From Bugula neritina (Eukaryota > Animalia > Bryozoa), in the NCBI GenBank assembly GCA_964035545.1, contig OZ037765.1, forward strand, positions 32,797,504 to 32,861,503: DNA of 64,000 nucleotides, in the 5' to 3' direction. Below, in pieces: positions 13,169 to 63,805 of this stretch (its first letter is position 1; each line of letters begins with the position of its first letter). The notes under the pieces are model-generated. The model saw nothing but the letters and a program-made list of their open reading frames with translations, had not been told where the DNA came from and did not search any database. The translations under genes and the position numbers were made by a program.

Positions 13169-13306
13169 TCTCAGTCAGCTGACTCAGTTAGAGATTTTAC
13201 ACATAGGATGGAATACTCTCAACACAGTACCAGATGTTGTGTCATCACTCACATCACTTAAATTGTTGAATATGAGTGGATGTGGTATATCCAGTCTACC
13301 TGAGAG
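13169..13306 (+). CDS. LRR exon E1 (138 nt, phase 2-2): SLSQLTQLEILHIGWNTLNTVPDVVSSLTSLKLLNMSGCGISSLPE
   Basis: tattacag acceptor, GAGAG|gtttgt donor, two 23-aa LRRs. Confidence 0.92.
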
Positions 13307-13775
13307 GTTTGTGTGTCACATGTTTATTACTACTTCACAACATCATTATTACTACTCCGTAACTTATATTTATACACAACTCATATAGTATATAAAATAA
13401 TATCCAGGCTATAGGGTGTGGCTATAATCTCTGTACTCAGCCTGAGTTCCCTGTGTTATAGTAAGGGTAGAGTGTACTTATTTTGAAAGCCCTCCTCTCG
13501 AATGACCATGAATAAAATTATTAGGACTCGTGAAAATTTCATAAGTGATTCAAACATTTTTACTAATAATATGACCAACACAAAAACCCAGTATATTTGT
13601 AAAATTCATATTAGGTGCTAAAGCCACCAGTTTATCTGGGATATGAATTTGAAAAATCGTCAATGATATATTTGTAAAATATGAGTTGTAGTCACATGTA
13701 TATTTTTGTGCTGCATAACATACATATGTTATGTGTATTTTTATTCTCTTGTCACAGTATAACTTTATATTACAG

Positions 13776-13913
13776 TCTCAGTCAGCTGACTCAGTTAGAG
13801 ATACTAGACATAGGACCCAATACTCTCAACACAGTACCAGATGTTGTGTCATCACTCACATCACTTAAACAGTTGAAGATGAATAGATGTGGTATATCCA
13901 GTCTACCTGAGAG
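13776..13913 (+). CDS. LRR exon E2 (138 nt): LEILDIGPNTL...LKQLKMNRCGI
   Basis: Same splice signals, open frame. Confidence 0.92.
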
Positions 13914-14394
13914 GTTTGTGTGTCACATGTTTATTACTACTTCACAACATCATTATTACTACTCTGTAACTTATATTTATACACAACTTATATAGTATAT
14001 AAAATAATATCCAGGCTATAGGGTGTGCCTATAATCTCTGCACTCAGCCTGAATTCCCTGTGTTATACAATTAAATAGTAAGGGTAGAGTGTAATTATTT
14101 GGACAGCCCTCCTTTCGAATAACCATGAGTAAAATCATTAGGACTCGTGAAAAATTCATACATTAAGTGAATCAAACATTTTTAATATTCTGACATACAC
14201 AAAAACCAAGTATATTTGCAAGCGTCATGTTAGATGCTAAAGCTGTCGCTTTATCTGGGATATAACTTTGACAAATCATCAATAATATATTTGTAAAATA
14301 TGAGTTGTAGTCACGTGTACATCTCCAAGCTGCATAGAATACATATGTTATGCGTAATTTTATTCTCTTGTCACAGTATACCTTTATATTACAG

Positions 14395-14532
14395 TCTCTC
14401 CAAGCTGATTCAGTTAGAGACACTAGATATAGGATGGAATACTCTCAACACAGTACCAGATGTTGTGTCATCACTCACATCACTTAAACAGTTGGATATG
14501 AGTGAATGTAGAATATCCAGTCTACCTGAGAG
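14395..14532 (+). CDS. LRR exon E3 (138 nt): LETLDIGWNTL...LKQLDMSECRI
   Basis: Same splice signals, open frame. Confidence 0.92.
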
Positions 14533-15012: not shown

Positions 15013-15153
15013 TCTCAATCAGCTGACTCAGTTAGAGATACTATACATAGGATACAATTATACTCTCAACACAGTACCAGATGTTGTGTCATCACTCACA
15101 TCACTTAAACAGTTGGATATGAATAGTTGTGGTATATCCAGTCTACCTGAGAG
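15013..15153 (+). CDS. LRR exon E4 (141 nt, one extra codon): LEILYIGYNYTL...LKQLDMNSCGI
   Basis: Same splice signals, in-frame 3-nt insertion. Confidence 0.92.
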
Positions 15154-15681: not shown

Positions 15682-15819
15682 TCTCTCCCAGCTGACTCAG
15701 TTAGAGAAACTAGACATAGGAGAGAATCTTCTCAACACAGTACCAGATGCTGTGTCATCACTCACATCACTCAAATTGTTGAATATGAGTCACTGTGGAA
15801 TATCCAGTCTACCTGAGAG
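15682..15819 (+). CDS. LRR exon E5 (138 nt): LEKLDIGENLL...LKLLNMSHCGI
   Basis: Same splice signals, open frame. Confidence 0.92.
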
Positions 15820-17724: not shown

Positions 17725-17862
17725 TCTCTCTCGGCTGACTCAGTTAGAGATACTAGACATGGGAAACAATACTCTCAACACAGTGCCAGATGTTGTGTCA
17801 TCACTCACATCACTTAAACAGTTGAAGATGAATAGATGTGGTATATCCAGTCTACCTGAGAG
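17725..17862 (+). CDS. LRR exon E6 (138 nt): LEILDMGNNTL...LKQLKMNRCGI
   Basis: Same splice signals, open frame. Confidence 0.92.
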
Positions 17863-18640: not shown

Positions 18641-18778
18641 TTTCTCCCAGCTGACTCAGTTAGAGGAACTAGACATAGGAGACAATACTCTCAACACAGT
18701 ACCAGATGTTGTGTCATCACTCACATCACTTAAACAGTTGAAGATGAATAGTTGTGGTATATCCAGTCTACCTGAGAG
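18641..18778 (+). CDS. LRR exon E7 (138 nt): LEELDIGDNTL...LKQLKMNSCGI
   Basis: Same splice signals, open frame. Confidence 0.92.
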
Positions 18779-19555: not shown

Positions 19556-19693
19556 TCTCTCCCAGCTGACTCAGTTAGATATACTATACATACAACAGAA
19601 TCATCTCAACACAGTACCAGATGTTGTGTCATCACTCACATCACTTAAACAGCTGGATATGAGTTACTGTAGTAGAGTTGGTCTACCTGAGAG
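19556..19693 (+). CDS. LRR exon E8 (138 nt): LDILYIQQNHL...LKQLDMSYCSRVG
   Basis: Same splice signals, open frame. Confidence 0.9.
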
Positions 19694-20168: not shown

Positions 20169-23100
20169 GCGTAGGGCCACACAACGCGGGTTTTCTGCAT
20201 GCGGGTCCAAATTTTAGGAAACCTGTTCTGGGAACAACTTGCCACACAAATAGCGTGGATTGTGGGTGCGGAAACTCATTGGCTGATGATCTTATAGTTT
20301 AACTTTACTGCTCGCCTACAGACATTCGTTTTTTAAATTTACATCACCGGCAAAGTTAGTGGGGGTGCCAACATGCAAAAATGGGCGGGTGGAGCACATC
20401 AATACTAACCTTTGTTGCTATATATCACTGCAAAGCCAACATTCTACTGATCTCAGATCTGCAAGTACCTTTTTTGTATCTGGGGGGGTTCTCTCGTGAG
20501 AGGGGTGAATATACAGGGGTTCAGCATTTTTCAAGGGGGGACTATGGAACTATAAATATTTAATTTTCTGAGTAGTTTAAGTTTGACATTAAAAATATTT
20601 TCAAGGAATGTTGTACACATATGAAACTTTCTCTAACAAAAGTTTTGACCAAAAATAAAAAAGTGGGCGGAGCCTATAATATGACAAACTACTTTTTTGC
20701 ATATACCGGATATTCTCTAAACTGCTACTTTTCTGTTCTAGCATTTAGAATGTTGATTTTTGGTATGAAAATACTCTATTGTGTTCTAATAATGCTCTCC
20801 AATTTTCATTACATTCTGAACTATATAACTTCTTTCCCAACCATGACAAATAAAAAACATAAAACGGGAGTTATCTCCTCCGTTATAAATTATTGCATTT
20901 CTACCCAATAATATTGCTCTTTGTTGATAGGAACAACATCAGCATGATAAAAATGTATTCTTAGTGTATTTATATTAGCTTATTGACTTATTTTGAGTAA
21001 TTGATTACGATCAACACTATTAAGTATTAATATTCAATATTTACTGTATAAATTGAGTGTCAGCAATAATTAACAGACCACTAATATTTGATTTTTTTAT
21101 CCATAAGTATAGTAACATAAAATATGGTTCATAAAAAAGTAATATTATGATTTCAGCATCACAAACAATTACTATGCTCTTTTATATCAGATATTGATAG
21201 ACATTTTTAATTGTATTTATTTATAAATAAGATAGTATTTAAATTTTAATTTACAATAGATCAAGCTTTATTACAAAGTTTTGTTATCTCTAGCGTTTAT
21301 ATACCAAATTAAATATATTATAATTCTTCATCAGAACTGTGTTTGTTGCCACCATCATCATAATCAGGCTTTGTTTGAAAAAGAAGACTGGCCACTTTTG
21401 TTGTTGCAATCGAAACATTTACATAAACCACAGCATTTCATCATCAGGCGCTTGCATTTGCATGCTTTACTCTTACAGCCTGCTTTTTTGCATTTACATG
21501 CTGTTAAAATCACATCTGCGTTGCTCTCAAAATCATATTTTATTGGAGTCAAGTTAGTATTCCAACCATGGTCAAAAATTGGCTAATGAAGTAAAATAGG
21601 TGTTAAAGCAAGTTGCCAAAGTGTAACTTGATAATTGGCTCGTTTCACGTGATATTCTAGGGAATTCCTACTAGGTGGTAGCCGTGCTTCACTGGAGACA
21701 TTTTTTAAAGCCAATATTTTATATCTTGCTTCAGTGATATCATCATAGGCACCGTATAAGTTGGAGACAAATCATTCACACTCTAAGTATGTTTCATCTG
21801 ATAATGGGGACCAATCATCAGAACCTAAAGACAGATTATAGCTTCCCTTTTCAAGTACCTCCAAAGCACGCTTTTTAGATATTCTGAAGATAGAACTTAC
21901 AGAGTCGCAACCTGTAAGTGCATGGAGTGATAACAGATTCTTGAGAACTTTTTGTGGAATTATTTTGGCTAATTCAAAAAGAGATATATATCTTCTGTGA
22001 CTCCCCATTCCAACAAAGATTACTACATCTTTATTAGCCTGCTCAGGTAAAACATTACTAAGATGATGTTAAGCGCAATAATAGCAACATTAGTATCTAC
22101 TGATCTTATTACTACCAAATCATAATCACTCAGTGCATCAGCTGCGTGAAGGATTAATCTCGTGTCTGCTTCATCATGATTGGATGTCAATTTGTTACAA
22201 TTGTAACGATGATGGTTTTGCAGAACACAGACTTCTTTGGCGCTACACACTAAAAATGTACCAGCTGGAATTTTCTCAATATGTCTACTCCATGCACCTT
22301 CATTATGTAATCTACCAACTCATTTTTGTTGTGAACATTGCTCAGAAAAGCACTCCAGTTTTTAGGAACAGGCACGTTGTTATGAATAATGGAAATAGAT
22401 CACATCTATTGGGCACCCCGTCTAATACGCTCTTGTGCTTTAATTGATGTTTCAGAATACACGTCAACCCTTGTATATCCTTTGCCACATTCAAAAAATA
22501 TTTCCAACATCTTCAGAGCGTAGTTATAAAAAGTGCCTGATGTTTTTGTTGAGTGAAGTATGCACATACCATCAATAATGATCGATTTGTTGGTGGACAG
22601 TTGACTATCATCATTGGAGACCCTGTTTCCAAGATATTTCTGTTCCAAAATATGCATTAGTTGCGATTTGCATGTTTTTCTCATCTGTACGTTTTCAGTA
22701 AATAGAGCAAGAGGAATGGGACCAATTTCTTTCTCTAGAACTGTATGCAAATTTACTTCTAGGCTTTTGGCACTTATGAGAAGTTGAGTAAATGATATTT
22801 TAGGAACATTTGGTTTAATGGCCGGTTGAAGTGATTTAGCCACAAAGTCAAAGGAAGGGATTTTAAGCCGGTGAATAGCAGTGTAAAATGGTTTTATTGC
22901 ATTCAAGAGTCTATCTTGAATAAACTTTTGAGCCGTTTCTGCTCCCTGAGCAATAACAGTCACTATTGACAAGGAGGTCTCCGCATCGGGACTTACTCCA
23001 GTAGCAATATTAATAAGTTCAGTTGAATTATTGCTAAACAACTTAACATCAAACTGCTGTAATGTAAAAAGAATTGCTTGTATATCAATCTCATCCTTCA

Positions 23101-25767
23101 TAGTTGTAATGATTGTGTCTTCCTTGTGTAGTGTTGATGACTGTGAGGCTATTTGGCAAAAATCCTTTTACAAAGAAAGCAGTTGGGCTCTGATATGACT
23201 AGTTAAGAACCATTTTGTCCGAGCTTCTTCGTGGTTGCTAATGCCAATAATACCTCCAGATGTTTTACTGTCTCGGTTCAAAGTTTGCTCCAAGACCTGA
23301 TCTGGAGCCTTACCTGCAAATTTTTTTTTGTCCTGTTTACAGTGAATGAACCCTTTGCAAACATTCCATAAACTTCTGGAGCAGATTCAGGCAAATTTAG
23401 CATATCAATAAGGTATATAGGCAGCCACCTTGAGTAGTTTGTGCGATCATACGCAAACAATACTGGTAGCATTGCCCGCATACTGTCCAAATATAATTGC
23501 CAGTTGCCACTACGCTCAGCTCGAATAAATCCCAACATGGCTTCTACTGCATGAAGGTAGGAACTCCAGAACATTGAAGGGTTAGATTTTAATTTAGTAT
23601 CAGAATCAAAATTTTTTATAGCAGTAGCAACTTTATCTGCGACAGTGGTCCATTCACGTAAGTTATCATCAATAGAAATATTATGAGAATCTGATGGTTC
23701 AAAATGATCATTTTCTTGAAGCTATTCCAAAAGAGATTTTAGTTTCTGCCTTGATATTGCCTCATACAAAATATTGTGCGCCCGTACACCTCTGTTATAA
23801 TGCTTACCACATAGCACCTGTTTCACTGTAACTTCAGAATATATATCACTGTGCACAAGAACTTGGGCGAGGTCGCTTGATTTTACCATTTTGCCAAGTG
23901 CTGCCATGTAATTCATCAAGATATAAAAACCGGCCATTCGAATTATTGTGTTTGAAAATTCAGTTGGTTTGTTCCATTGAATCTCTTTGGCAATCTTGTA
24001 GATAGCTTGGTCAAATGTAATTACTGAATGTTTCTGAGTTAAAACTTCCATGGTTTTTTTAGCTGCAGAAGGATTGTATAAATTGTTGATGGATCTGTTG
24101 ATGGTGCATTAATCATTGGGCAATACCCAATGACTGATCTTTTATTATCTTCTGTGGCAACCAAATTTCTTACATTAAAGCTACTCCAGCTGAGGCAATT
24201 ATGTGTAGAAGGAATTATATCTAATTGAAATAGTTTGATTGGGGTAAGTCTTGCCAATAGCCATGCTGTATTTAGATTACATGAATCCTCAAGTGACTTT
24301 TTCATATTCAGCAATGTCTCTTGACTAAGTTTTGTGATAAAATATGATTTTGAGAGCAACGCAGATGTGATTTTAACAGCATGTAAATGCAAAAAAGCAG
24401 GCTGTAAGAGTAAAGCATGCAAATGCAAGCGCCTGATGATGAAATGCTGTGGTTTATGTGAATGTTTCGATTGCAACAACAAAAGTGGCCAGTCTTCTTT
24501 TTCAAACAAAGCCTGATTATGATGATGGTGGCAACAAACACAGTTCTGATGAAGAATTATAATATATTTAATTTGGTATATAAACGCTAGAGATAACAAA
24601 ACTTTGTAATAAAGCTTGATCTATTGTAAATTAAAATTTAAATACTATCTTATTTATAAATAAATACAATTAAAAATGTCTATCAATATCTGATATAAAA
24701 GAGCATAGTAATTGCTTGTGATGCTGAAATCATAATATTACTTTTTTATGAACCATATTTTATGTTACTATACTTATGGATAAAAAAATCAAATATTAGT
24801 GGTCTGTTAATTATTGCTGACACTCAATTTATACAGTAAATATTGAATATTAATACTTAATAGTGTTGATCGTAATCAATTACTCAAAATAAGTCAATAA
24901 GCTAATATAAATACACTAAGAATACATTTTTATCATGCTGATGTTGTTCCTATCAACAAAGAGCAATATTATTGGGTAGAAATGCAATAATTTATAACGG
25001 AGGAGATAACTCCCGTTTTATGTTTTTTATTTGTCATGGTTGGGAAAGAAGTTATATAGTTCAGAATGTAATGAAAATTGGAGAGCATTATTAGAACACA
25101 ATAGAGTATTTTCATACCAAAAATCAACATTCTAAATGCTAGAACAGAAAAGTAGCAGTTTAGAGAATATCCGGTATATGCAAAAAAGTAGTTTGTCATA
25201 TTATAGGCTCCGCCCACTTTTTTATTTTTGGTCAAAACTTTTGTTAGAGAAAGTTTCATATGTGTACAACATTCCTTGAAAATATTTTTAATGTCAAACT
25301 TAAACTACTCAGAAAATTAAATATTTAGAGTTCTATAGTCCCCCCTTGAAAAATGCTGAACCCCTGTATATCCACCCCTCTCACGAGAGAACCCCCCCCC
25401 AGATACAAAAAAGGTACTTGCAGATCTGAGATCAGTAGAATGTTGGCTTTGCAGTGATATATAGCAACAAAGGTTAGTATTGATGTGCTCCACCCGCCCA
25501 TTTTTGCATGTTGGCACCCCCACTAAGTGACTTTCAATATTATAAAAGCGAAAATGGAAACTATATGGAACTGTTTTGATTCAGTTCGCTAAAAATTAAA
25601 ACTCGAATGGAAATTAAAGAAGTGTGCTTGCTAAATGGTAATCAGCCAATTACATCAAACTTACACAAGCTTTCTGCACTTCCGTCTCAGCATGTTATCA
25701 GCATGGAAACCCGCACGCAACAGCCCATTTTTGGGCTAGACGGGTCTCCCCGCATGTTGCCCTACGC
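20169..25767. mobile_element. Harbinger-like MITE (about 0.44 kb), copy 1, interrupted by Academ
   Basis: Terminus GCGTAGGGCCACAC; uninterrupted copies at 39055-39511 and 44053-44484. Confidence 0.6.
20357..25525 (-). mobile_element. Academ (AcademX-like) DNA transposon, decayed, with about 1.19-kb inverted arms (20357-21543 / 24337-25525)
   Basis: TAG...CTA termini and 3-bp TSD AGT, confirmed by the empty site near 39241 (GGCAAAGTGAC); fragments FDQAIYKIAKEIQW, GKHYNRGVRAH, GNWQLYL, FAYDRTNYSRW, HDEADTR, HALTGCD, Cys-rich tail. Confidence 0.88.
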
Positions 25768-30956: not shown

Positions 30957-30980
30957 TTAAGACGTTGGGGCTAAACCAGA

Positions 30981-51317: not shown

Positions 51318-51368
51318 TTAATTACGTTACGTAATTAATTAAAAATGAAATATTAATTATTTAGGGCG

Positions 51369-51779: not shown

Positions 51780-51802
51780 TTATATTAAAAATTATTCTTT
51801 AA

Positions 51803-52117
51803 CTATAATATCGCGCCTAAAATAGGAATACCTTTAAAAAGACTTTTTGGACCTAAAAGTAAACCTTTTCCAACTTTTTTATATTCCGAATTATTTAATA
51901 TATAATAGCCGTTACCTTTTATATAGTTAGGTTTTTTAACTTCCGTTAATGTAGCAGTTTTTCCATCAGGAGATACTTTAACTGAACACAAACACTCACC
52001 CCTTTTTAATGATAAACCTTTACCTTTTGATAAATATAAACCTTTACCTTTAATAATACTTTCCGCATCCGATGTCCGTAACTTCGATATAAGGTTGATC
52101 GTATATTTTTGCGTCAA
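51803..52117 (-). CDS. Small basic Polinton protein (core-protein-like), 5' end probably lost
   Basis: GKGLYL repeats and a C-terminal GKGLLLGPKSLFKGIPILGAIL. Confidence 0.5.
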   Translation of the reverse strand: MTQKYTINLISKLRTSDAESIIKGKGLYLSKGKGLSLKRGECLCSVKVSPDGKTATLTEVKKPNYIKGNGYYILNNSEYKKVGKGLLLGPKSLFKGIPILGAIL

Positions 52118-52556
52118 AACCTAAAACGTCTCTTATAGAATTTTCAACGGTAAAATCTATTTGATAATTAAGTTTTAATTTAAGTATAATCCTAAAAGTT
52201 ACTTTATTAGCTTGCAAAGTAATATCGTTTCTATTACCCCCCTCTTTTACTGTTTCATCTTGAATAGCTTGTTCTAATTGATCTAATTCATACACACTAA
52301 TTGGTAATGAAACTAAATACCACGTATTACCACCGTCTTTAGACCATCTATAGGAATTTCTATTGGTACTAATGTTTGGAAAAGAATAAAATGTATCTAA
52401 ACTGATAAGACACATTTCAAATTTTTTATTTTTATTTAATTCTATAGGTGGATTAAGTTGAGTAATTATTCTCGTTTTAGTATCGGTAACTCCTATAGTC
52501 ATAGTTTGTTTAGAGGCCGTATTATCGGCAATTTCTCGTAATAATTTGTTCTCCAT
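52050..52556 (-). pseudogene. Minor capsid (penton-like) protein, C-terminally truncated
   Basis: Lies directly downstream of the major capsid gene; LNPPIEL, YSFPNI and SIRDVLGF motifs. Confidence 0.65.
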
Positions 52557-53830: not shown

Positions 53831-53910
53831 TTAAATAAGGAAAAAAGTTAATAAGCTATAGCTTGACCGGAACCTTCTAAAATATTACTAATATTATTTC
53901 GCACTCCGTT

Positions 53911-54177
53911 TTACGCTTGTCGTTCAACCAGTTGACTAAGCGTATTTAATACGGCTCGATTTTTAGCGTTTAATTTTTTCTTTCGACTTGACTTTTTTGA
54001 TATCGCGCTAATAATTTTTTCACCGGCCGCGTTACCGGCTTTAGCTATAGCCTTTTTACCTAATTCTCTTACGCTAGAATTACTAGCTATTTTGCTTACT
54101 AAATTCCTAATGGTGTCAAATATTCCACCACCGGCGTAGTGTCTTTGTAATCGTTGTCTTTTATCGTAAACATACAT
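53911..54177 (-). CDS. Small basic Polinton virion protein with a GGG protease-cleavage-like site
   Basis: YAGGGIFDTIRNLVSK followed by an amphipathic, Lys-rich helix. Confidence 0.55.
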   Translation of the reverse strand: MYVYDKRQRLQRHYAGGGIFDTIRNLVSKIASNSSVRELGKKAIAKAGNAAGEKIISAISKKSSRKKKLNAKNRAVLNTLSQLVERQA

Positions 54178-54986
54178 TTATTATAGACGTAAAAGAATGT
54201 TTTATATTCGTCACGAATAATTTCTTTCATTCTAAGTAATTCGTCTAATATAGCTACGATTTCATTTTGTACACCCGTATGTCCGGCTTGAACGCTTGAA
54301 AATAAATGTTGAAGTCAGTCTACTAAAGCGTTGGGGTCTTGAGATAAATAAACTACTCCGCTTCCCCTCTTAGATATTTTACTATCGGCGCGTTTCGCTC
54401 TTTGCGGATATAATTGTTCCCAAATAGGTCTAACGATACGTCTCCACTTTTCACTATTCTTATCCTTAGAACTGTGTTTACTTTGATATATAGCGCCGCT
54501 ATTATCGAGTATATTAGCGTAATTCGCTAAATCATTATCATCGTATCCTATCGGCGTTTTACGCGTTAAAAGACTTAAAAGTCCTCTAGTCGCTTGATAT
54601 TCTTCGCCGTTAAAAATTATTTTACCATCGTTAAAGCTTATAGGTTTAGTACCGATAACGTGTCTATTACCGTCCCACTTTACGTTATAAGTGCCGGGTT
54701 CTAATCCCGCTAAAGCGTTTTGTGTAAATTCGTCCAAATTTATAACTCCGTCAGTTATAGCCGGTTGAACGTTATAATTGGGTAATGTAAGTAATTGTTT
54801 TAACGCGTCAGTCGTTTGCGCTTGCGAAGTCGTTACTGGTTTAAAATATTTTTCTTGAGCCATTGCGGCATTTAATTCTTGCTCGCGTTCTCGTTTAAAA
54901 TTTTCTTTTATTCTATTCTTTCGAGAAATAAAATGTTGTACGATCTTATCTCTTTTTATCAGGTCATCAATCTTTAAATAACTCAT
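54178..54986 (-). pseudogene. Polinton protein (frameshift at about 54315)
   Basis: ...GSGVVYLSQDPNALVD continues in another frame as LQHLFSSVQAGHTGVQNEIVAILDELL. Confidence 0.6.
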
Positions 54987-54993
54987 TTATATA

Positions 54994-55151
54994 GACACAA
55001 ATTTGTGTCCACTTTTGTGTCTAGTGTCCACTTTTGTGTCCATTTTTGTGTCTAGTGTCCACATTTGTGTCCACTTTTGTGTCCAGTGTCCACATTTGTG
55101 TCCACTTTTGTGTCCAGTGTCCACATTTGTGTCCACTTTTGTGTCCAGTGT
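54994..55151. repeat. Minisatellite of TTTGTGTCCAC / TGTCCAGTG units within the Polinton
   Basis: Directly visible, period about 31 bp; begins with the palindrome GACACAAATTTGTGTC. Confidence 0.9.
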
Positions 55152-57017
55152 TTATAACTGTTCTAAAGCGTCTAAATTTACCCACGAGTTTTGAGACTCG
55201 GGATAACCCAACCATTTTACTAAGGCCTTTTTACCTTTCTTTTTAATTACGCGCTCTATTCTATAAGTTTCTTGACTCGTCTTTTGTAATTCCTGTTTGT
55301 AAAAAGATCCTTGAATTTCTTCTCCTCCCAAATAAGTTAATTTATAAGTCGTTGGATTTGTATATAATATTTTACTTATAGTAAACACCTCCTCCGTCCA
55401 TCTAACGGTATAACCTTTTTCAAACGTTCGTTTCTTACGCGGTATATGCACTCTATCACCTATAGCGAATTTAGGTTTAGAAGGCGTGGGTAAGTTTGGA
55501 TATAATTTTATACGTACTTTATTTACGTTAGAGGGGTCACTAGCTTCAATTGGTGTCATTCCGGTAGACGAATGTTTAGTCTCGTTATACCGTTTTACTA
55601 AATCTTTTAATACGTCTATTTATCTATAGGTATTATTCGCCGAAAAATATTTAAACATTCGCTCTTTCATTGTTCTATTCCACCTTTCTACTACGCTAGA
55701 CTTTTCTTCATTTTCCGTAGAATATAAGTCTATTAAGGGCTTTACATCTTTATTATAAAACTCTTTTCCCTTGTCAACCCATAAATGTTGAGGCTTATGG
55801 AAAATTGTTTTTAAAGCTAAAGCAACGGCTTTACCGGTTTTATTTTTTAAAGGTATTATCCAACCGTATTTAGAAAACACGTCTATTACCGTTAATAAAT
55901 ATTTATAACCGTCGTTAATTTCAGCGAATTCAGTCATATCAACCAAGTCGGCCCCCCAAATATCATCAATACCCGATACCCAAACTCGTCTTTTACGAAA
56001 CTTCTTTTGTACGGGTTTATGCAATTCTTCGGCTAACTCATCCGTCCAACGAACTCCCCATCCAAAATGCTTTTTTGTTCCTATTACCGCCGAGGCAAAA
56101 CGACTGTGTCGCTGTTCGGCGGGTGTGGGATTAGGTATAGCTTTTAGTTTGTCTAGCATATTTTTATCACATATTTCGTTTCTAGTTTTAGTATCTTTAT
56201 TAAGTGCGTAACATATGTCGTGTTTCATAGCTATAGCGTCGTCTCGATCTACCGGTTTACTCCATTTTTTAGGAGTCATATCGTCATTCATACGCTTATC
56301 TAATTTAGTACCGGGACCTAAAAAATTATGATTGGGGTAATGCAATTCAACGGGTAAATTGTTTATTAAATTATTCATTAAACCCGACCCTTTTTTAATA
56401 AATGTAGTCTTTTTACATCCGCATTGACTGCAATTACCGTAACCCATTAGTCTTTTATTTTTACTTTCTCTTTCTCCATAATTGAGAGCTTTTGTTTTAA
56501 TTTTACACTTGAAGACCTCAAAGGAAAAATGGCATATGTCCAATTTTGCAAATTTTCACAAATTGAAAATTAAAATTTGGAAACTTGCAACTGCTATCGA
56601 TATGAATCAATTCTAACCAAATTTGATATTATGGTTTTTGAACATGTTTCAAACAACTAGACAAAAAGAAATTTGACCAAGTTTACATAAAATACACAAT
56701 TTGCTAGTCTAAAAATATTTCACATGCGCACCGTCATTAGTCAATTGTTATCACATGACTGGACATAAGTTATTTTTCTTTTGTGATGACTGGACATAGG
56801 TTATTTTTCTTTTGTGATGACTGGACATAGGTCTTTGTTGCTTTGGGGTGGGTTTCAAATCCAGCCTTAAAACCATGGACAAAATTTGTTTTTCTCTTTG
56901 ATAATTTTATGACTAAAACTTTAATACTTGAGCTATCCAAGGGAAGAAAAATCTCATTTTTTTTTAAAATGGACAAATGTCGTTTTTCTTTTGAGGTCTT
57001 CACTTACAACAATACAT
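55152..57017 (-). pseudogene. Polinton retroviral-type integrase with N-terminal Zn ribbon and PLA2-like domain and C-terminal chromodomain; interrupted by a MITE and a stop at 55620
   Basis: Reconstructed MYCCKCK...CSQCG; NFLGPGT...AMKHDICY; WGADLVD, WVDKGKEF, VVERWNRT; LVKWLGYPESQNSWV. Confidence 0.9.
56511..57001. mobile_element. MITE (491 bp) with a 4-bp TSD, possibly Sola-type
   Basis: About 31-bp TIR GAAGACCTCAAA(G/A)GAAAAA..., TSD ACTT, internal 31-bp tandem repeat. Superfamily uncertain. Confidence 0.75.
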
Positions 57018-57029
57018 TTATTATAATAA

Positions 57030-57566
57030 ATGGAAATAGAAAATCTTTTGTGGAAAAACGAAATTAATCGTAATAATAATCCTTTACTTCCTAAAAGCAT
57101 AAGAGGACTTATCGTTGGAAAGTCTGGATGCGGTAAAACTACGTTACTTTGTAACTTACTATTACAACCTAATTGGCTCGATTACGATAAACTTATGATT
57201 TACGGTAAAAGTCTTTCTAAACCCAAATATATAAATATGAAAAAAGCTTTCGAGCTCGGACTAACTAAAGAAGAAATTTTAAATTTCTTTAAAAATTGTG
57301 AAACGATAGTAAATTCGGGTATAAACGTAAATCGTATTTTAAAAAATTACACTATGGGTAACGGTAATATAAACGCTGAATTTATCGAATCTAGTGACGA
57401 CGTTTATGACCCTAGTGAATTAGACGCTAGTAATAAAAATTTAATAATATTCGATGATTTAATGTTGGAAAAACAAAAAACTTGCGAAAGTTATTGTACA
57501 ACGAGCAATGGTAATATAATAGAATCTACAGAATCTCAACCCACATTTCCAAGTTATAACGTTTAA
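57030..57566 (+). pseudogene. Packaging ATPase (A32/FtsK-like), truncated after Walker B
   Basis: GKSGCGKT and LIIFDD; runs into the right TIR. Confidence 0.85.
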
Positions 57567-58352
57567 ACACTGTTGCATATTAAATTATTATATTCTCAGC
57601 GTATAATAATTTATTACATCAACTCGAAAATTATATTTATCTTCTTTAAAAAACTAGTAAAATAATTATACTAGTAGTAGGAAGTGGTTGCGTTCTGGAA
57701 CAGCACCCTGACACCGGAGAGTCGAAGACTCGGCGGGGGAAGGGGGTTGTCCCAGAACCAACTACTTCCTACTACTACTACTTCACAACGTAATTATTAC
57801 CTTCCTTTATAATGTATTTATACACAACTTATAGAATATAAAATAATATACAGGATACAGAGTATAGCTTTATATTTAAACTTTTCAGGCTTAGCCTTAG
57901 ATTCCTGTATTATACAATAAAATGATAAGGGTGCAGTGTAAATATTTATGGAGCCACCCTCTCTCTTGACTCTGAATAGAAATATGAATGAACTTGTACT
58001 TTCCTACAAGATAACCATAGGGAAAAGATTTATTAAATGAGTTTCAATGCAAATAAATTGTAACATAGAAGATATGATTATCCATGTGAATTTATTCTAT
58101 AGCATGGATAGTTCAAATTAATCTGTAGCAACTATTACTTGGTAAGTCGTGAGAATGAAACTAATCGTGTTAATTTACTTCATATATAGTACACTTACAT
58201 TTATATTTCGGGTTTAGTATGTTAACACTTCATAGACACTAGCCTTTAGGGGAGGGTGAATAATAAAAACGCACTACATACCTAAGGATAGCATAACACA
58301 ACCAATCTAATTAGATGCCGCTATCCAGCTGCACTTATCCAATTGCGCTCTC

Positions 58353-61300
58353 TGTTGTAATATTTACACAGTTTATGTAAACTTGGAGTTACCTTTTCTT
58401 GATGTTTTAACTGATCAATTATTATTCTGTTTTTGAAAATAATAGTCACTTCCTGTTTGACTAACTATAGTGCTTGATTAAAACAATTTGAAGATGAAAA
58501 CTAATCCACTAATAATTGCTAGATAAATAGACATCAAGAGAATAAAACATGGTGGCAGCGTAATTTGATGGTTAGTTTAAAAGATGGAAGGCATTTCACC
58601 ACCTGGACAATTGAATTTAAGGGCAGAAGATTTGTCAGGAGAATGGCGGCGTTGGATTAGGTCATTTGAGGATTATTTGCTAGCAATAGACCTAACTGCT
58701 AACTCAAGAGCCGCAGAAAAAAGGAAATTAGCCTTATTCAGACATTGTGGTGGTGAAGATGTACGTGAAATTTATTCTCAAATGGAATTTAATCTAGAAG
58801 TTAGTGGAGAAATTACTGAAATTGAAGAAGGGGTTGATGGGAGAAAGCTAGAAGATGTAATTAAGCGTTTTCATGAGTACTGTAATCCTCGCACTAGTAT
58901 TGTGCTGAATAGATTTCAATTTCACAACAGTAGCCAAAGTGGAGATACAATTGATGTATACTTGATGAAATTACGAAGGCTGGCGGAAGGTTGTGAATTT
59001 GGCAATCAAAGAGATTCAATGATAAGAGATAAACTGCTTTTTGGAATTAATGATTCAAATGAAAGAGAAAAATTAATGAAAGAGGTTGATGAAAAACTAA
59101 GTTTAGATTTTGTGATTAAGTCGCTGAGAGTAGCTGAGAAGTCTACAAGGCCTAAAGCGATGACGCTACCAGACCCCAAACCCGAGGAAGTGAACGGAGT
59201 GCAAAATGTCGATAATAGGAAGTCAAGAATCCCTTCTGAAGTTGCTTATGATAAACATTCTAAGAACCGATGTGAACAATGTGGGAAAAGCCATTACAAA
59301 AATCAGAGATGTCCAGCTTATGGAACTAAATGTGCGAAATGCAATAAATTTAACCATTGAGCCAGAGTGTGTAGAAATTTGAATAGAGTTAATGAAGTAC
59401 AGCCAGAAAAGGGTGACACAGATTTTTATTTAGAAGAGACACATCTCATTAACTCTATAGATTCTCAATCCTGGTACACCAATCTCAGAGTAAGCACCAA
59501 CAAACACAAAGGACAAAGGATCAAATTTAAATTAGATACTGGTGCGTCTCTTAGTGTATGTGGTCCACATCACATCTCAGGGGAGCTAATCTCAACTAGC
59601 AAAAAATTGTACGGCCCAGGGCAGACACTTTTGACATGTTTAGGAACAATAAAGTGCCAGATAACATCAAAGAATGAGCGCATAAATGAAGACCTTTATG
59701 TTATTCAAGATCAAACCACACCATTGCTTAGCCGTAGTGCATGTGAGAAATTAAGCCTCATCTCTGTGGATTCATCTCAATGCCAAATAGAGAATGTGTG
59801 TGTTGATGAGAAGCTGTTCCAAGGATTGGGGAAAGTAAATACAGAGCATGTCATTACGTTGAAAGGAGATGCTAAACCATTTGCTATCCATGTTCCCAGA
59901 CCCATACCTTTTCCTAGAAGAAAGTTAGCAGATGAAGCATTGATGAAAATGATTGAAGATGGAGTAATTGTTAAAGTTGATGAACCTACTCCATGGGTGG
60001 CACCTATGGTAGTAGTTCCTAAACCTGGCCAAAACAAGGTGAGAATTTGCACAGATTATACCGAGTTAAACAAGCATATTTTGAGAGAGTTCCATCCCAT
60101 GGCAACAGTAGATAGCAGCTTAGCTCAATTAGGACAAGGACAAATTTTTTCCAAGATTGATGCAAACAGTGGATTTTGGCAAATTCCTTTAAGCAAAGAA
60201 TCTAGCAAACTAACAACATTTCTGACTCATTCTGGACGATATCGCTATTTGCGACTGCCTCAAGGCCTATGCAGTGCTCCAGAGATTTCTGTTGCTGAAA
60301 TGAACAATATTTTGAAGGATGTTGATGGTGTGGTTATACATATGGATGACATTCTGGTTTTTGGTGAGAGCAAGGAACAACATGACACAAGATTGCAAAT
60401 AGTGTTGGAAAAACTTAAAGCTTCAGGCATTACGCTCAATAAAGACAAATGTAAATTTGGAGTACCATCTGTTAATTTTCTTGGTTATGTCATAGATCAG
60501 TCTGGTATACATGTTGGCCCTCGAGTTCAAGGAATAGTAGATTTTCCTACTCCGAAAAATGTAACTTCAGTACGAAGTTTTCTTGGAATGGCCAACCAGT
60601 ATGCTAAGTTTTCCGAGGAATTAGCTGCTGTGAGTGAACCAATTAGAATGCTGTTGAAGAAAGAGGTTCCATGGCACTGGTCCAGCAAACAAGAAAACTC
60701 CTTCAAGAGGATAAAAGAAATATTTCAAAATGCACCAGTTTTAGCAGTCTATGATGTAGACAAAGACACCATAATCATAACAGATGCTAGCAATGCAGGT
60801 CTAGGAGCAACACTCTGTCAAATTCAACAGGATGGCTCTCGGCGCTTGATATCTGCTGCAAGTCGTTCTTTAACAGAGACCGAAAAGCGTTATGCAGCCA
60901 TAGAAAAAGAAAGTTTAGCAGTCTGTTGGGCTATGGAAAAGTTTTCTCCATATATACTAGGTATGAAGAATGTGGTTATTGAAACTGATCACCGTCCACT
61001 AGTTACTTTGTTTGGGAATATCTTTCTAGACAGGCTTCCACCAAGAATTCAAGGGTTTAAACTTAGACTTCAAAGATTTCAGTATACTATCAGACATGTG
61101 AGGGGGTCTAAGAATGTTGCAGCTGATGCTCTCTCCAGGTATAACACTGCTGAAGCGAACGAGATTGATGCAGCAAGAGAAATGGAAATTGAACTTTATA
61201 TTGATAACATCTACCAACATGGATCTGATAGCAGGTTGGAGCAGCTTCGTTTAGAACAGCATGAAGATGAAATACTGTCAAAAGTAATCAAATTAGTAGA

Positions 61301-62707
61301 AAATGGATGGCCAGGGTATTTGTCCACTGAAGATGTTCTTCTGAAGCCTTATTTTGAAAGAAGATCTCTTTTAACAATAAACAAAGGATTCTTGACACTT
61401 GGCAATCGTTTGGTAATACCGTTAGCTCAAAGAGAACAGGTGTTGCAAGATTTACATAGAGGACACTTGGGCATTACAAAATGTCAAGCACGGGCTAGAG
61501 ATAGCGTGTGGTGGCCTTCTATGTCAAAGGCTATTGAGGCTATGATCAGCAATTGTGCTGAATGCAAAATCCATGCAGCTAAAATTACAGAGCCATTACG
61601 TCCTTCTGCAACTCCAGATAGACCTTGGCAACACCTTAGCACTGATTTGTTGACTTATAAAGGCCAAGTATACCTTCTGGTTATTGATAATTATTCAAGG
61701 TATCCTGAACTTGCCTTGCTGGGAAACTCTGACTTTTCTTCAAGTAAAGTAATAACACACCTAAAATTTATTTTTTCACGACATGGCATACCTGAAATAC
61801 TATTGTCAGATAACGGCCCGCAATATGCAAGTGCAGAATTTAAACATTTTTCTGTCGAGTATGGATTTACCCATGTGACTAGCAGTCCACATTATCACAG
61901 AGCGAATGGAGCAGCTGAGCGAGGAGTAAGGACCATCAAAAGCATGCTTGCAAAAGAGAAAGATCCTTATTTGGCTTTGTTAGCCTATAGATCCTCACCG
62001 CAGTTTAGCTCATACTCTCCAGCAGAATTGTTAATGGGTAGAAAATTGAGATCCACTGTACCCATCCATCCGGATAAGCTTAAACCTGAACTCCCTGACC
62101 ATGACTTATTCAAAAGGAGCAACGATCAGTATAAAGAGAAAATGAAAGAAAATCATGACAAAAATCCTAAAGTGCGCCCTCTTTTGCCAGTAAATAAAGG
62201 AGACAATATGATGGTGAGAGATATGCAAAGAGAAGGCTATGCTGCCTCTTCTTCAGATAATATTACTCGTCGAACAAATGTCATGACTGACACTGGACCT
62301 TTAATACGTAACAGAGCTGATATAACTAATATCCCAACACGATGTTCTGAGCGAACCAGAAAAGTGCCACGCTACTTAACAGATTTTGATTGTACATAAT
62401 TTATTATCCACGCCTGTAATATAAGTTGCACTTGATTTAATTACTGTTGTCAAACCTTTTCTTTTGTGTGTTTTTTTTTTGGTTGTTGTAGCCTGAAACT
62501 AAAGAGGGGATGTTGTAATATTTACACAGTTTATGTAAACTTGGAGTTACCTTTTCTTGATGTTTTAACTGATCAATTATTATTCTGTTTTTGAAAATAA
62601 TAGTCACTTCCTGTTTGACTAACTATAGTGCTTGATTAAAACAATTTGAAGATGAAAACTAATCCACTAATAATTGCTAGATAAATAGACATCAAGAGAA
62701 TAAAACA
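58353..62707 (+). mobile_element. Full-length young Gypsy (Mag-like) LTR-retrotransposon: LTRs 58353-58549 and 62511-62707
   Basis: 197-bp LTRs identical by eye, TSD CTCTC, PBS TGGTGGCAGCG (tRNA-Leu), PPT AAAGAGGGGA. Confidence 0.97.
58584..62399 (+). CDS. Gag-Pol polyprotein in a single frame with one TGA at 59358-59360
   Basis: Two zinc knuckles, LDTGA protease, HMDD RT, TDAS RNaseH, HHCC plus SDNGPQ integrase. Confidence 0.93.
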
Positions 62708-63667
62708 CTCTCAACCCACTATAATTAGTTAGTCTCCTCATTGTTCACAGCGTACCTTGTTAGTATAGCAATGTAAACACTAGTAGGCCGAACATATTAG
62801 GGACGCTAAGCATTAGGATAATTGTCTTTCGATATACACAGGAGCACAACTCCTTACAATATTACTGACTCTAAGCATTACTATTGGTTACCATTAGCTG
62901 TAATGCTCTTGTTACAAGTGGTTCTTGCTTTATAGCAGTTGTAGGTGTTATTACAGTACTCTTTTATTAGAGATTAAATATTATCAAGCTGAGCTATATT
63001 ATTTTCCTGTAAAATTCGTTTGTAATAAAAACTTGTGTACAAGTGCCTCTCATTCTAAAAAGATAATTTCATTGTTTGAAAAGTTTCACTTTTTTATTTT
63101 TTAAAGGCTTACTTTAAAAAATTCAACTTTTTCTCAAAAATCTTTTGAGAATAATTTCTTATTAAATTCTCTATCTAACAAAAATTAGAAAAATAATTTG
63201 AGCTTGAAAATGTTGTATTTACTCAAAGAAACTCCGTTAAAGTTTCATGAATGCATGTTAGTCCACATCTTTCAAATATATATAATTTCAAACTTCTCAT
63301 GGTATTTCTAAAAATTGCAAGAAACTGGACAAGTTGTTTTGGCTGAGTTGTTTTGCCTTTTAGTTTAAGTAAGCCAGGAAAAGAATACATTTTGTAGTTA
63401 AGGTTTAATTGTTCAAAGTATTTGTAAGCTTCAAATAGAAATTGGTATTTCAATAATTTTTTATTTTGCTTTTCGTTCCAATTCTCTATTTCAACAAATA
63501 TGATGCGATGTAGGTCAAATAAATTTAAACGTTAAAAATTACATGCAATAGCTGATACATCCTAAAACATGCAGTTGTGACTTCCTGCCTATATCTGTAT
63601 TGCATAAAATACTTTTATTTGCATTTAATTTTAGTCTCTTCTCACTATGCATATCTTTATATTACAG

Positions 63668-63805
63668 TCTCAGTCAGCTGACTCAGTTAGAGAGACTAGA
63701 CATAGGAGATAATTCTTTCAACACAGTACCAGAAGTTGTGTCATCACTCACGTCACTTAAACAGTTGAATATGAGTAGATGTGATATAGCCAGTCTACCT
63801 GAGAG
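63668..63805 (+). CDS. LRR exon E16 (138 nt): LERLDIGDNSF...LKQLNMSRCDIA
   Basis: tattacag acceptor, GAGAG|gtttct donor, open frame. Confidence 0.9.

What the first reader, a model, noticed from the sequence alone, without database searches (positions are those of the whole stretch)
13169..63805. Array of 16 interchangeable two-LRR cassette exons: candidate diversifying immune/recognition receptor system
Seen: 16 exons of 138, 141 or 129 nt, all multiples of 3, all phase 2-2 and stop-free. Each ends in AG and the next starts with T, so every junction rebuilds the same Ser codon. Any exon can therefore be skipped, duplicated or swapped without changing the frame or the junction residue. Known analogies: one-module-per-exon LRR shuffling in Ectocarpus ROCO genes, cassette-assembled lamprey VLRs, and splicing diversity in Dscam. 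Inference: a hypervariable LRR receptor (ROCO/MFHAS1-like, NLR-like or other; the effector domain lies outside the window) diversified by alternative splicing and/or recombination.
Basis: partly seen in the sequence, partly recalled or inferred. Interest (0 to 1): 0.9.

Follow-up and report, generated by a model that had tools for sequence, protein, structure and literature searches.

The report
LRR cassette exons of Roco-caspase gene
The 16 repeated exons are real and form most of the leucine-rich-repeat sensor arm of one very large LRR-Roc-COR-caspase gene, one of about 100 such genes in what is most likely a bryozoan genome; the variety seen was made in the germline by exon duplication, and nothing yet shows that cells mix cassettes.

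Summary
Observation confirmed. All 16 exons sit at the stated places (12 of 138 nt, 2 of 141, 2 of 129). Each follows AG, starts with T, ends AG|GT and is stop-free, and each encodes two LRRs.

The array is longer than reported. Three more cassettes lie 7-9 kb upstream and two lie downstream, giving 21. Next come a 2-kb exon (last LRRs + Roc + COR) and caspase exons, just past the window edge. The missing effector is therefore a Roco GTPase fused to a caspase.

The genome holds at least 75 such Roc-COR exons and 322 cassette cores. The nearest named relatives are Watersipora (bryozoan) "MFHAS1 homolog" proteins. Their cassettes use the same AG|T...AG|GT design.

Cassettes are kept by selection: exon divergence is 0.13 against 0.29-0.50 in flanking introns, with no frame-breaking indels. 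They vary at predicted exposed LRR positions (dN/dS 1.4-1.8 against 0.4-0.5 in the framework; the excess over 1 is not significant).

Recent block duplications (92-95% identity) and a cassette count of at least 3 to 21 among paralogs show germline exon shuffling.

RNA contigs show splicing at the predicted borders, but only at family level. Combinatorial splicing and somatic assembly are untested or unsupported.

The scan had already reached the same reading on two other pieces of this genome.

The parts
13169..13306 (+). cassette exon 1 (138 nt, two LRRs)
   Evidence: AG|T...AG|GT, stop-free. Pfam LRR_8/LRR_1. Its protein is identical to the upstream cassette at window -8100..-7963.
13776..13913 (+). 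cassette exon 2 (138 nt)
   Evidence: member of the 610-bp tandem array e1-e5.
14395..14532 (+). cassette exon 3 (138 nt)
   Evidence: An RNA-run contig ends exactly at 14532 and continues into a cassette start.
15013..15153 (+). cassette exon 4 (141 nt, one extra codon)
15682..15819 (+). cassette exon 5 (138 nt)
17725..17862 (+). cassette exon 6 (138 nt)
   Evidence: The block e6-e7 is 95% identical to e13-e14.
18641..18778 (+). cassette exon 7 (138 nt)
   Evidence: The block e7-e8 is 92% identical to e10-e11.
19556..19693 (+). cassette exon 8 (138 nt)
26639..26767 (+). cassette exon 9 (129 nt, degenerate type; possible pseudo-exon or irregular repeat)
   Evidence: No Pfam LRR hit. Pro in the LRR core and a 3-residue deletion. 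The region is 92% identical to that of exon 12.
37539..37676 (+). cassette exon 10 (138 nt)
38445..38582 (+). cassette exon 11 (138 nt)
39999..40127 (+). cassette exon 12 (129 nt, degenerate type)
42583..42720 (+). cassette exon 13 (138 nt)
43493..43630 (+). cassette exon 14 (138 nt)
44969..45109 (+). cassette exon 15 (141 nt, degenerate type)
63668..63805 (+). cassette exon 16 (138 nt). It is the first of the last three cassettes before the Roc-COR exon; the other two and the Roc-COR exon lie beyond the window end.
   Evidence: 704-bp tandem array with the two downstream cassettes
20356..25526 (.). transposon with 1.19-kb terminal inverted repeats, inserted in the intron between exons 8 and 9
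   Evidence: 20356-21543 against 25526-24337 inverted, 99.4% identical. The flanks continue the unit seen uninterrupted at 37522-39478.
27496..35777 (+). LTR-retrotransposon-like insertion in the intron between exons 9 and 10
   Evidence: ORFs. Integrase_H2C2 in 29301-30251. The unit homology breaks at 27496 and resumes at 35777.
45375..62399 (.). intron between exons 15 and 16, filled by a virus-like element (double-jelly-roll capsid, integrase-like) and an LTR retrotransposon (RT, RNase H, integrase)

Best explanation
The 16 exons are the middle of the LRR-coding region of one germline gene for a single-chain LRR-Roc-COR-caspase protein.

The gene runs from about 9.1 kb before the window to about 8 kb after it. 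It has a 5' exon ending AA|GT, then 21 cassette exons (3 upstream, 16 in the window, 2 downstream). A 2-kb exon follows that also starts AG|T and encodes the last LRRs, the Roc GTPase and COR. Caspase exons come last.

It is one of roughly 100 such genes, in what is most likely a bryozoan genome.

The cassettes arose by repeated tandem and block duplication of exon-plus-intron units, that is, by unequal crossing-over. Only exons flanked by introns of the same phase can be duplicated this way without breaking the frame, which explains the interchangeable design.

Selection, perhaps together with gene conversion, keeps the splice sites, the frame and the LRR framework. The predicted solvent-exposed positions of each repeat change freely. 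Transposons have since inflated several introns.

Inferred working: the LRR arm binds a ligand from a pathogen or from non-self. Roc-COR acts as a nucleotide-driven switch and dimerisation device. The fused caspase is activated by induced proximity.

Shown here: the exon anatomy, domain content, family size, duplication history, selection pattern and family-level splicing at the predicted borders. Inferred: that all 21 cassettes enter one mRNA, the identity of the ligand, and the mode of activation.
For: - **Anatomy:**. The Roc-COR exon begins TATAG|T at window 67525, in the same phase as the cassettes.
- **Domains:** COR-A 40.9 bits (cut-off 35.3); Roc 20 bits, with P-loop, DxxG and THLD visible; Peptidase_C14 78.6 bits. 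PDB sequence matches go to the Chlorobium Roco Roc-COR, to LRRK1/2 and to caspase-3.
- **One gene:** the only 5' exon of this type and the only Roc-COR exon between C1:32.58 and 32.92 Mb bracket the array.
- **Family:** 75 Roc-COR exons scored out of 114 candidates, with a caspase exon found within about 4 kb downstream of those compared. The 32-nt cassette core occurs 322 times.
- **Relatives:** Watersipora subatra RefSeq proteins carry LRR + Roc/COR + caspase. In one Watersipora gene (P0151) seven or more consecutive 141-nt cassettes are each AG|T...AG|GT; another (P0032) has 141-153-nt LRR exons and a 2055-nt exon spanning the last LRRs to the COR region.
- **Selection:** exon JC 0.13 against intron flanks 0.29-0.50, with no frame-breaking indels. 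Framework dN/dS is 0.42; exposed positions give 1.77. The Fisher test of exposed against framework gives 2e-5.
- **Duplication:** e6-e7 match e13-e14 at 95%, e7-e8 match e10-e11 at 92%, e9 matches e12 at 92%, and the upstream block matches e1-e3 at 84-91%.
- **Count per paralog:** at least 3 to 21.
- **Splicing:** in run X8 (its library is recorded as RNA-Seq; the tool marks the RNA kind as a guess) exon bins are deep and intron bins near zero. Contigs join ...GAGAG directly to a cassette start. One contig joins the 5' exon end to a cassette start. None of these joints appears in the DNA-like runs.
Against: - No read or contig proves that the window's own exons are in an mRNA. The RNA contigs are short and fit several paralogs: the 26-nt 5'-exon end occurs at 3 loci.
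- Introns of 7, 11, 18.6 and 20.5 kb full of transposons are unusual beside the 470-780-nt introns of the compact parts. Parts of the array may therefore be skipped or dead.
- Exons 9, 12 and 15 have a broken LRR core.
- The start codon is not established. A short conserved ATG exon upstream has lost the donor position that paralogs use, although an alternative in-frame path exists.
- The excess of dN over dS at exposed sites is not significant (P = 0.12 and 0.23).
- The function is by analogy only.
Confidence: 0.75

Rival explanations
1. Combinatorial alternative splicing: cells include different subsets of the 21 frame-neutral cassettes. One gene would then give many LRR arms, as reported for brown-algal ROCO genes, or in the spirit of Dscam.
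For: - Every cassette, the 5' exon and the Roc-COR exon share the same phase, so any subset stays in frame.
- In the RNA run, one contig joins the end of exon 3 to a start like that of exon 5. Another joins the 5' exon directly to a start like that of exons 6 and 10.
- Brown-algal LRR-ROCO genes with one LRR per 72-bp exon do show splice variants with different LRR content (PMC11378527).
Against: - The joint contigs carry letters that differ from this locus, and they fit paralogs equally well.
- No docking/selector complementarity is shared by the cassette introns: at most 4 of 21 share an 11-mer.
- The mapped RefSeq model of one Watersipora relative (P0151) uses consecutive cassettes, and none of the Watersipora hits is named as an isoform.
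- No spliced cDNA was found in the metagenome contig collection or among the protein hits.
Confidence: 0.12
2. Somatic assembly or gene conversion of cassettes (lamprey VLR-like), with the window acting as a donor-cassette reservoir.
For: - There are many near-identical cassettes with an almost invariant 32-nt core that could guide in-register recombination.
- Cassettes are far more alike between distant family members than the rest of the gene is.
Against: - All cassettes have canonical, selected splice sites and lie in one orientation between a 5' exon and the effector exons of a complete germline gene.
- The DNA-like runs show no cassette-to-cassette joints over exons 1-7.
- No evidence was sought or found for a dedicated deaminase or recombinase.
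Confidence: 0.03
3. Partly dead array: the recent 5-kb block copies and the degenerate exons are non-functional by-products of unequal crossing-over and transposon activity. Either the mature mRNA uses only some cassettes, or this gene copy is a pseudogene.
For: - Exons 9, 12 and 15 have a broken LRR core, and the one scanned (exon 9) has no Pfam hit.
- Very large transposon-filled introns lie only in this part of the gene.
- The donor of the putative ATG exon is altered.
- Copies at 92-95% identity are too young for an intact frame to prove selection.
Against: - Taken together, the cassettes are much more conserved than their introns and keep every splice site and frame.
- A degenerate cassette sits at the equivalent place in the closest paralog, before its last cassettes. 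It may therefore be a regular, irregular-shaped repeat.
- The Roc-COR and caspase exons are open and carry their catalytic motifs.
Confidence: 0.2
4. Assembly artefact: the repeated blocks are collapsed or expanded haplotypes rather than real tandem copies.
For: The region is highly repetitive. Only exons 1-7 were checked against reads.
Against: - Unique intron pieces between exons 1-7 lie at an even depth of about 100-115 in the DNA-like run X1.
- The blocks differ in cassette content and in transposon insertions, not only in point differences.
Confidence: 0.03

Closest known systems
Brown-algal LRR-ROCO genes with exon-shuffled LRRs (Ectocarpus, Saccharina; PMC3341825, PMC11378527)
   Same: - LRR-Roc-COR order.
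- LRRs encoded by short tandem exons of symmetric phase that can be duplicated, lost or skipped in frame.
- Variation at concave-face positions.
- An expanded family proposed as immune receptors.
   Different: - Here there are two LRRs per 138-nt exon, not one per 72-bp exon.
- The organism is an animal, most likely a bryozoan.
- A complete caspase is fused at the C-terminus.
- There are at least 75 genes, against 9-47 per brown-algal species.
- Alternative splicing and positive selection are shown there but not here.
MFHAS1 / bacterial Roco (Chlorobium tepidum) LRR-Roc-COR proteins
   Same: - N-terminal LRRs followed by the Roc-COR tandem.
- The RefSeq pipeline names the Watersipora relatives 'MFHAS1 homolog'.
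- PDB sequence matches go to the Chlorobium Roco Roc-COR region.
   Different: - Vertebrate MFHAS1 has no caspase (my own knowledge).
- Vertebrate MFHAS1 is not a multigene family (my own knowledge).
- Orthology was not tested.
NLR inflammasome sensors with modular LRR exons (NLRP family)
   Same: By my own knowledge: an LRR sensor with repeat-per-exon, in-frame modules; a nucleotide-driven switch; a caspase as output.
   Different: - The switch is a Roc-COR GTPase, not NACHT. No NACHT hit was found in the Roc-COR exon.
- The caspase is in the same chain, not recruited through CARD or PYD.
Lamprey variable lymphocyte receptors
   Same: Many LRR cassettes lie near one gene, and diversity sits at concave-face residues.
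   Different: By my own knowledge, the VLR germline gene is incomplete and its cassettes lack splice sites and are copied in somatically. Here the germline gene is complete and each cassette is an ordinary exon.
Dscam-type exon clusters
   Same: Arrays of similar, frame-compatible exons.
   Different: - By my own knowledge, Dscam picks one exon per cluster through docking/selector RNA pairing.
- No such pairing was found here.
- The cassettes here are additive repeats of a solenoid, not alternatives for one position.

Membership tests
ROCO proteins | Roc (Ras-like GTPase) domain | tested here: met
   Pfam Roc scores 20 bits, below the 27-bit cut-off. However, GxxxxGKT, DFGG and THLD motifs are readable in the ORF. 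phmmer also matches the Roc-COR region of Chlorobium Roco (E 1e-7), LRRK1 and LRRK2.
ROCO proteins | COR domain directly after Roc | tested here: met
   Pfam COR-A at 40.9 bits against a cut-off of 35.3, residues 323-388 of the same exon.
ROCO proteins, LRR-Roc-COR subtype | N-terminal LRR domain in the same gene | tested here: met
   There are 21 cassette exons plus LRRs at the start of the Roc-COR exon, all on the same strand and in a compatible phase. A single mRNA was not shown.
MFHAS1 orthologues | orthology to vertebrate MFHAS1 and its LRR-Roc-COR-only architecture | not tested
   The only support is the automatic RefSeq name of the Watersipora relatives. No tree was made. The C-terminal caspase is a difference in architecture.
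Caspases (peptidase C14) | p20 with catalytic His and Cys, plus p10 | tested here: met
   Peptidase_C14 at 78.6 bits. SHG and ACRSG are readable in L005:6663-7229, and a GSPFI-type p10 stretch in L005:7920-8111. Caspase-3 is the best PDB match.
Exon-shuffled LRR-ROCO (brown-algal type) | each repeat unit on its own exon, flanked by introns of one phase | tested here: met
   All 21 cassettes read AG|T...AG|GT. The unit here is two LRRs (138 nt), not one (72 bp) (PMC11378527).
Exon-shuffled LRR-ROCO (brown-algal type) | positive selection at concave-face residues | tested here: inconclusive
   dN/dS is 1.77 and 1.41 at positions fixed in advance as the x of LxxLxLxxNxL, against 0.42 and 0.45 in the framework. 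The excess over 1 is not significant (P 0.12, 0.23). The contrast with the framework is significant (2e-5, 7e-4).
Exon-shuffled LRR-ROCO (brown-algal type) | splice variants with different LRR content | tested here: inconclusive
   Contigs of the run recorded as RNA-Seq show exon-exon joints at the predicted borders. They cannot be assigned to a locus or an isoform.
VLR-like somatic cassette assembly | incomplete germline gene; donor cassettes without splice signals | tested here: not met
   The germline gene has a 5' exon, cassettes with canonical splice sites, and effector exons.
Dscam-like mutually exclusive splicing | docking site complementary to a selector before each alternative exon | tested here: not met
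   An 11-mer reverse-complement scan of the first and last introns against all cassette flanks found at most 4 of 21 sharing one match. This was a simple scan, so weak pairing could be missed.
NLR (NACHT-LRR) | NACHT/NB-ARC NTPase | tested here: not met
   Pfam on the central exon finds Roc and COR-A only.

The most novel reading that the evidence does not exclude
In an animal, a family of about 100 single-chain LRR-Roco-caspase receptors uses arrays of frame-neutral two-LRR exons as a combinatorial library. Regulated exon choice, or in-register recombination guided by the nearly invariant 32-nt cassette core, would give different cells, zooids or colonies different sensor arms wired directly to a death protease. 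That would be a further independent invention of LRR-based variable receptors, possibly serving colony allorecognition.
Probability: 0.1. Interest if true: 0.9.

Novelty: new variant of a known kind. Interest (0 to 1): 0.6.

Why it matters
Exon-shuffled LRR-ROCO genes have been described as candidate immune receptors in brown algae. Those algae were said to hold more ROCO genes than any other organism reported (9-47 per species, PMC11378527).

Here the same building principle appears in an animal genome, with at least 75 genes, two-LRR cassettes and a caspase in the same chain. The sensor, switch and executioner of an inflammasome-like pathway are then one polypeptide.

My four searches of the paper library on bryozoans, ROCO, MFHAS1 and caspase found no description of this family. 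RefSeq labels the relatives only as "MFHAS1 homolog".

Bryozoans are colonial animals, listed in PMC8195603 among those with allo-incompatibility. The family is therefore a concrete candidate set for that question.

It also gives a clean system for asking how repeat arrays stay uniform in framework yet varied at contact positions.

Tried and rejected
- **Transcript evidence for this locus.** The runs are stored as short contigs and paralogs are 85-95% alike, so only family-level splicing could be shown.
- **Protein search with one cassette.** I used the region option so that proteins of up to about four cassettes could match. All 25 hits are genomic ORFs that read through into the intron (LPERFV...). 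None is spliced.
- **Scans of metagenome contigs for spliced junctions.** Two patterns can occur only in spliced cassette junctions. The first gave 0 hits. The second gave 11 chance hits without any cassette core.
- **Host contigs in JGI symbiont metagenomes.** These were meant for a comparison of haplotypes. They match this genome at only about 85%, so they come from another lineage and cannot serve as alleles.
- **Dscam-like docking/selector scan.** Negative.
- **Positive selection.** The ratio is above 1 but not significant with 17 or 16 cassettes.
- **Start codon.** It was not settled.
- **Transposon or satellite carrying an LRR-like ORF.** Rejected: cassettes always lie between a 5' exon and a Roc-COR exon, and RefSeq models of a relative use them as exons.
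- **NLR.** Rejected: there is no NACHT.
- **Spliced model.** Exons were searched singly and by reference.
Full report
**1. The observation**

A repeat scan finds 16 copies of an 81-166-nt unit on the + strand between 13.2 and 63.8 kb. Working back from the shared donor, I placed each exon.
- 138 nt: 13169-13306, 13776-13913, 14395-14532, 15682-15819, 17725-17862, 18641-18778, 19556-19693, 37539-37676, 38445-38582, 42583-42720, 43493-43630, 63668-63805.
- 141 nt: 15013-15153 and 44969-45109.
- 129 nt: 26639-26767 and 39999-40127.

Every one follows AG, starts with T, ends in AG, is followed by GT and is stop-free in the frame that leaves one base at the 5' end and two at the 3' end. Each regular exon encodes 45 whole residues forming two 23-residue LRRs. 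Pfam gives LRR_8, LRR_4 and LRR_1.

The pattern is not chance and not merely recent copying.
- Among the 17 regular cassettes of this gene, exon divergence is 0.13 (JC). The 100 nt upstream and downstream diverge by 0.50 and 0.29.
- The exons have no gap columns, whereas the flanks have 27 and 5 on average.
- AG and GT are invariant in 21 of 21 cassettes, and conservation fades about 25 nt into the introns.

**2. What surrounds it**

The window is G000:C1:32797504-32861503, in a 216-Mb genome of 321 contigs. I fetched the flanks.
- Three more cassettes lie at window -8721..-7346. Two more lie at 64372-64509 and 65080-65217.
- Upstream of the first cassette is an exon at -9115..-8885 that ends AA|GTGAGT. 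It joins any cassette in frame.
- Downstream, after a minisatellite-filled intron, a large exon starts TATAG|T at 67525. It runs in an open frame of 678 residues.
- That exon holds terminal LRRs, a Roc GTPase (P-loop, DFGG and THLD readable; Pfam 20 bits) and COR-A (40.9 bits, cut-off 35.3).
- About 1.1 kb further on, an ORF gives Peptidase_C14 (78.6 bits) with SHG and ACRSG. A p10-like ORF follows.
- PDB sequence matches go to the Roc-COR region of Chlorobium Roco, to LRRK1/2 and to caspase-3.

An earlier first-stage note (s1-487144) gave me this lead, and I verified it.

Between C1:32.58 and 32.92 Mb there is exactly one 5' exon of this type and one Roc-COR exon, and they bracket the array. 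The simplest model is one gene of about 81 kb with 21 cassettes.

**3. The family and the organism**
- The Roc-COR exon has 75 scored matches in the genome (114 candidates), nearly all open. Eight are 81-94% identical on C1:32.86-33.66 Mb, and the rest are about 40% identical.
- Caspase exons lie within about 4 kb downstream of the Roc-COR exons that I compared in the two tables.
- The 32-nt core of the cassette occurs 322 times with up to 3 mismatches. Reversed controls give 0.
- An HMMER search of 1.84 billion proteins finds 90 relatives at E<=1e-30.
- The named relatives are RefSeq proteins of the bryozoan Watersipora subatra, called "MFHAS1 homolog" or uncharacterised. Two of them (1413 and 1419 aa) carry LRRs, the region matching our Roc-COR exon, and a full caspase.
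- The runs that hold the window are labelled organism A and "symbiont metagenome".

I take the genome to be a bryozoan. That rests on the nearest relatives, not on a marker gene.

**4. The design is family-wide and old**
- In Watersipora gene P0151, seven or more consecutive cassettes are 141 nt and each reads AG|T...AG|GT. Some of their introns are only 88 nt.
- In gene P0032, LRR exons of 141-153 nt are followed by a 2055-nt exon spanning the last LRRs to the COR region, and then by caspase exons.
- In this genome, genes on contig C6 have a Roc-COR exon only 40% identical to ours. They nevertheless use the same 138-nt cassettes with the same borders.

**5. How the array was made**

Self-comparison shows nested duplications.
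- Exons 1-5 form a 610-bp tandem array. Exon 16 and the two downstream cassettes form a 704-bp tandem array.
- The upstream block matches exons 1-3 at 84-91%. The protein of exon 1 equals that of the second upstream cassette.
- Exons 6-7 match 13-14 at 95%, exons 7-8 match 10-11 at 92%, and exon 9 matches exon 12 at 92%.
- The middle of the window is three copies of a unit of about 5 kb. Each copy ends in a degenerate cassette (9, 12, 15) followed by a 188-195-residue ORF of unknown kind.

Later insertions inflate the introns.
- A transposon with 1.19-kb inverted ends, 99.4% identical, lies at 20356-25526.
- An LTR-type element lies at about 27.5-35.8 kb.
- A virus-like element with a double-jelly-roll capsid, and an LTR retrotransposon, lie between 45.4 and 62.4 kb.

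Introns are 470-780 nt in the compact parts, but 6.9, 10.8, 18.6 and 20.5 kb where elements sit.

The cassette count in the eight close paralogs ranges from at least 3 to 21, and ours is the largest. These are lower bounds taken.

**6. Selection and homogenisation**

Variation among cassettes is concentrated at residues 9, 11, 14, 16, 34, 37 and 39. These are the x positions of LxxLxLxxNxL, which by established LRR structure face the solvent on the concave sheet.

I fixed the 12 x positions in advance and obtained the following.

| Cassette set | dN/dS, exposed x positions | dN/dS, framework | P, excess of N over 1 | Fisher, exposed vs framework |
|---|---|---|---|---|
| C1 | 1.77 | 0.42 | 0.12 | 2e-5 |
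| C6 | 1.41 | 0.45 | 0.23 | 7e-4 |

Exposed positions therefore evolve at about the neutral rate or faster. Positive selection is suggested but not shown.

There is a second, unexpected result. Between our gene and a C6 member:
- The Roc-COR exon is 40% identical in protein and 51% in DNA, with synonymous differences saturated (pS 0.77).
- The LRRs encoded at the start of that same exon are just as diverged.
- Yet the cassettes are 81% identical in DNA, with framework dS of 0.17.
- Intron similarity between the two sets stops about 15 nt from the splice sites.
- Fixed differences separate the two cassette sets. This points to homogenisation within subfamilies rather than very recent exchange between them.

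Either cassettes are kept alike by gene conversion or exchange, or their nucleotide sequence itself is constrained. The data here do not say which.

**7. Expression and splicing**

Only one read-laying run was allowed, and all runs are kept as short contigs.

| Bin type (example bins) | X1 depth (DNA-like) | X8 depth (library recorded as RNA-Seq; kind marked as a guess by the tool) |
|---|---|---|
| Unique intron pieces | about 100-115 | 0-124 in most intron bins |
| 13540-13739 (intron) | 316 | 4 |
| 14140-14339 (intron) | 103 | 0 |
| 16140-16339 (intron) | 231 | 0.4 |
| 13140-13339 (exon 1) | 17040 | 25392 |
| 14340-14539 (exon 3) | 814 | 3196 |
| 15540-15739 (exon 5) | 7673 | 6368 |

Only X8 has contigs in which ...GAGAG, ending exactly at 14532, is followed by a cassette start. 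Depths of these joint contigs are 70 to 381.

In one X8 contig, the last 26 nt of the 5' exon are followed by a cassette start. That 26-mer occurs at three loci, one of them ours. The letters at the joints differ from this locus.

So splicing at the predicted borders is shown for the family. It is not shown for this gene, and no isoform can be read.

Searches for spliced products elsewhere found nothing.
- A protein search with one cassette found only genomic ORFs that read through into the intron.
- Two scans of metagenome contigs for spliced junctions gave only chance hits.
- Host contigs in JGI metagenomes match at about 85% and belong to another lineage.
- A scan for docking/selector pairing of the Dscam kind was negative.

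**8. Reading**

The best-supported account is an ordinary germline gene of an extraordinary family.
- The interchangeable design follows from growth by exon duplication, and it is conserved across bryozoans.
- Combinatorial splicing remains possible (I give 0.12). Somatic assembly is unlikely (0.03).
- Part of the array may be skipped or dead (0.2). This applies above all to the three degenerate cassettes, although a cassette of that type sits at the equivalent place in the closest paralog.
- The 5' end is unsettled. Most paralogs lack an ATG in the exon before the cassettes. A short conserved ATG exon lies about 330 nt upstream. In our copy the donor position used by paralogs reads GA. However, the next GT together with a TTTCAG|T acceptor 10 nt inside the following exon would keep the frame. 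This is inference only.

**9. Comparison and novelty**

The nearest known system is the brown-algal LRR-ROCO family. Its features are 72-bp exons with one LRR each, symmetric phase, four positively selected concave sites, splice variants, and 9-47 genes per species (PMC11378527, PMC3341825).

This case differs in the two-LRR cassette, the animal host, the family size and the fused caspase.

Four searches of the paper library found no description of the bryozoan family.

Earlier follow-ups in this scan (s1-453596, s1-444236) describe the same family on other pieces of this genome and reach the same reading. I checked their main claims on my own data: family size, domain order, and no evidence of cell-level mixing.

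**10. Limits**
No structure was predicted.
- The virus-like and retro-elements are only described.

Noticed in passing
window 45375-57566: A virus-like mobile element, mostly on the - strand, lies in the intron between exons 15 and 16. It has a double-jelly-roll capsid ORF (52898-53821, Pfam DJR-like 1e-30), an ORF with an Endonuclease VII hit and a polymerase-B-like motif by eye (47891-49009), an ORF with PLA2-like and weak integrase-core hits (55620-56543), and a P-loop ORF (57030-57566). It looks like a Maverick/Polinton-type element. I only describe it.
   Followed up: partly
window 20356-25526: A 5.2-kb element is bounded by 1.19-kb inverted repeats that are 99.4% identical. Its - strand ORFs (22406-24599) have no Pfam hit. 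It appears to be a recent DNA-transposon insertion.
   Followed up: partly
window 35768-36334 and 40816-41403: Two copies of a 188-195-residue ORF on the + strand belong to the 5-kb repeated unit between cassettes. One copy has only a weak C2H2 zinc-finger hit, and the other has none. Its nature is unknown.
   Followed up: partly
window 11300-12650: A complex 1.3-kb microsatellite of (CAG)n, (TAG)n and a 23-nt TAG-rich unit lies in the 20.5-kb intron before exon 1.
   Followed up: no
L005:1776-3380 (window 65776-67380): A minisatellite fills the intron between the last cassette and the Roc-COR exon. The same repeat sits at the same place in at least two paralogs and in host contigs of a related lineage.
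   Followed up: partly
all cassettes; G000 genome-wide: The 32-nt core that encodes VPDVVSSLTSL is identical in 46 cassettes on C1. It differs by one base in dozens on C6, including at synonymous sites, although the Roc-COR exons of those genes are saturated at synonymous sites. The cause is unexplained: gene conversion, a splicing signal or a recombination anchor are possible.
   Followed up: partly
window 23-1551 and 28530-32458; 58584-62399: There are Gypsy-type LTR retrotransposon pieces (RT, RNase H, integrase). The 59367-62399 ORF is 1010 residues and open.
   Followed up: partly
window 6196-7254 (- strand): An open 352-residue ORF, rich in Glu, Arg and Ser, has no Pfam hit. It lies inside the long intron before exon 1.
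   Followed up: no
window 54998-55164: A tandem repeat with alternating 12- and 19-nt units (GTGTCCAC-rich) lies inside the virus-like element.
   Followed up: no
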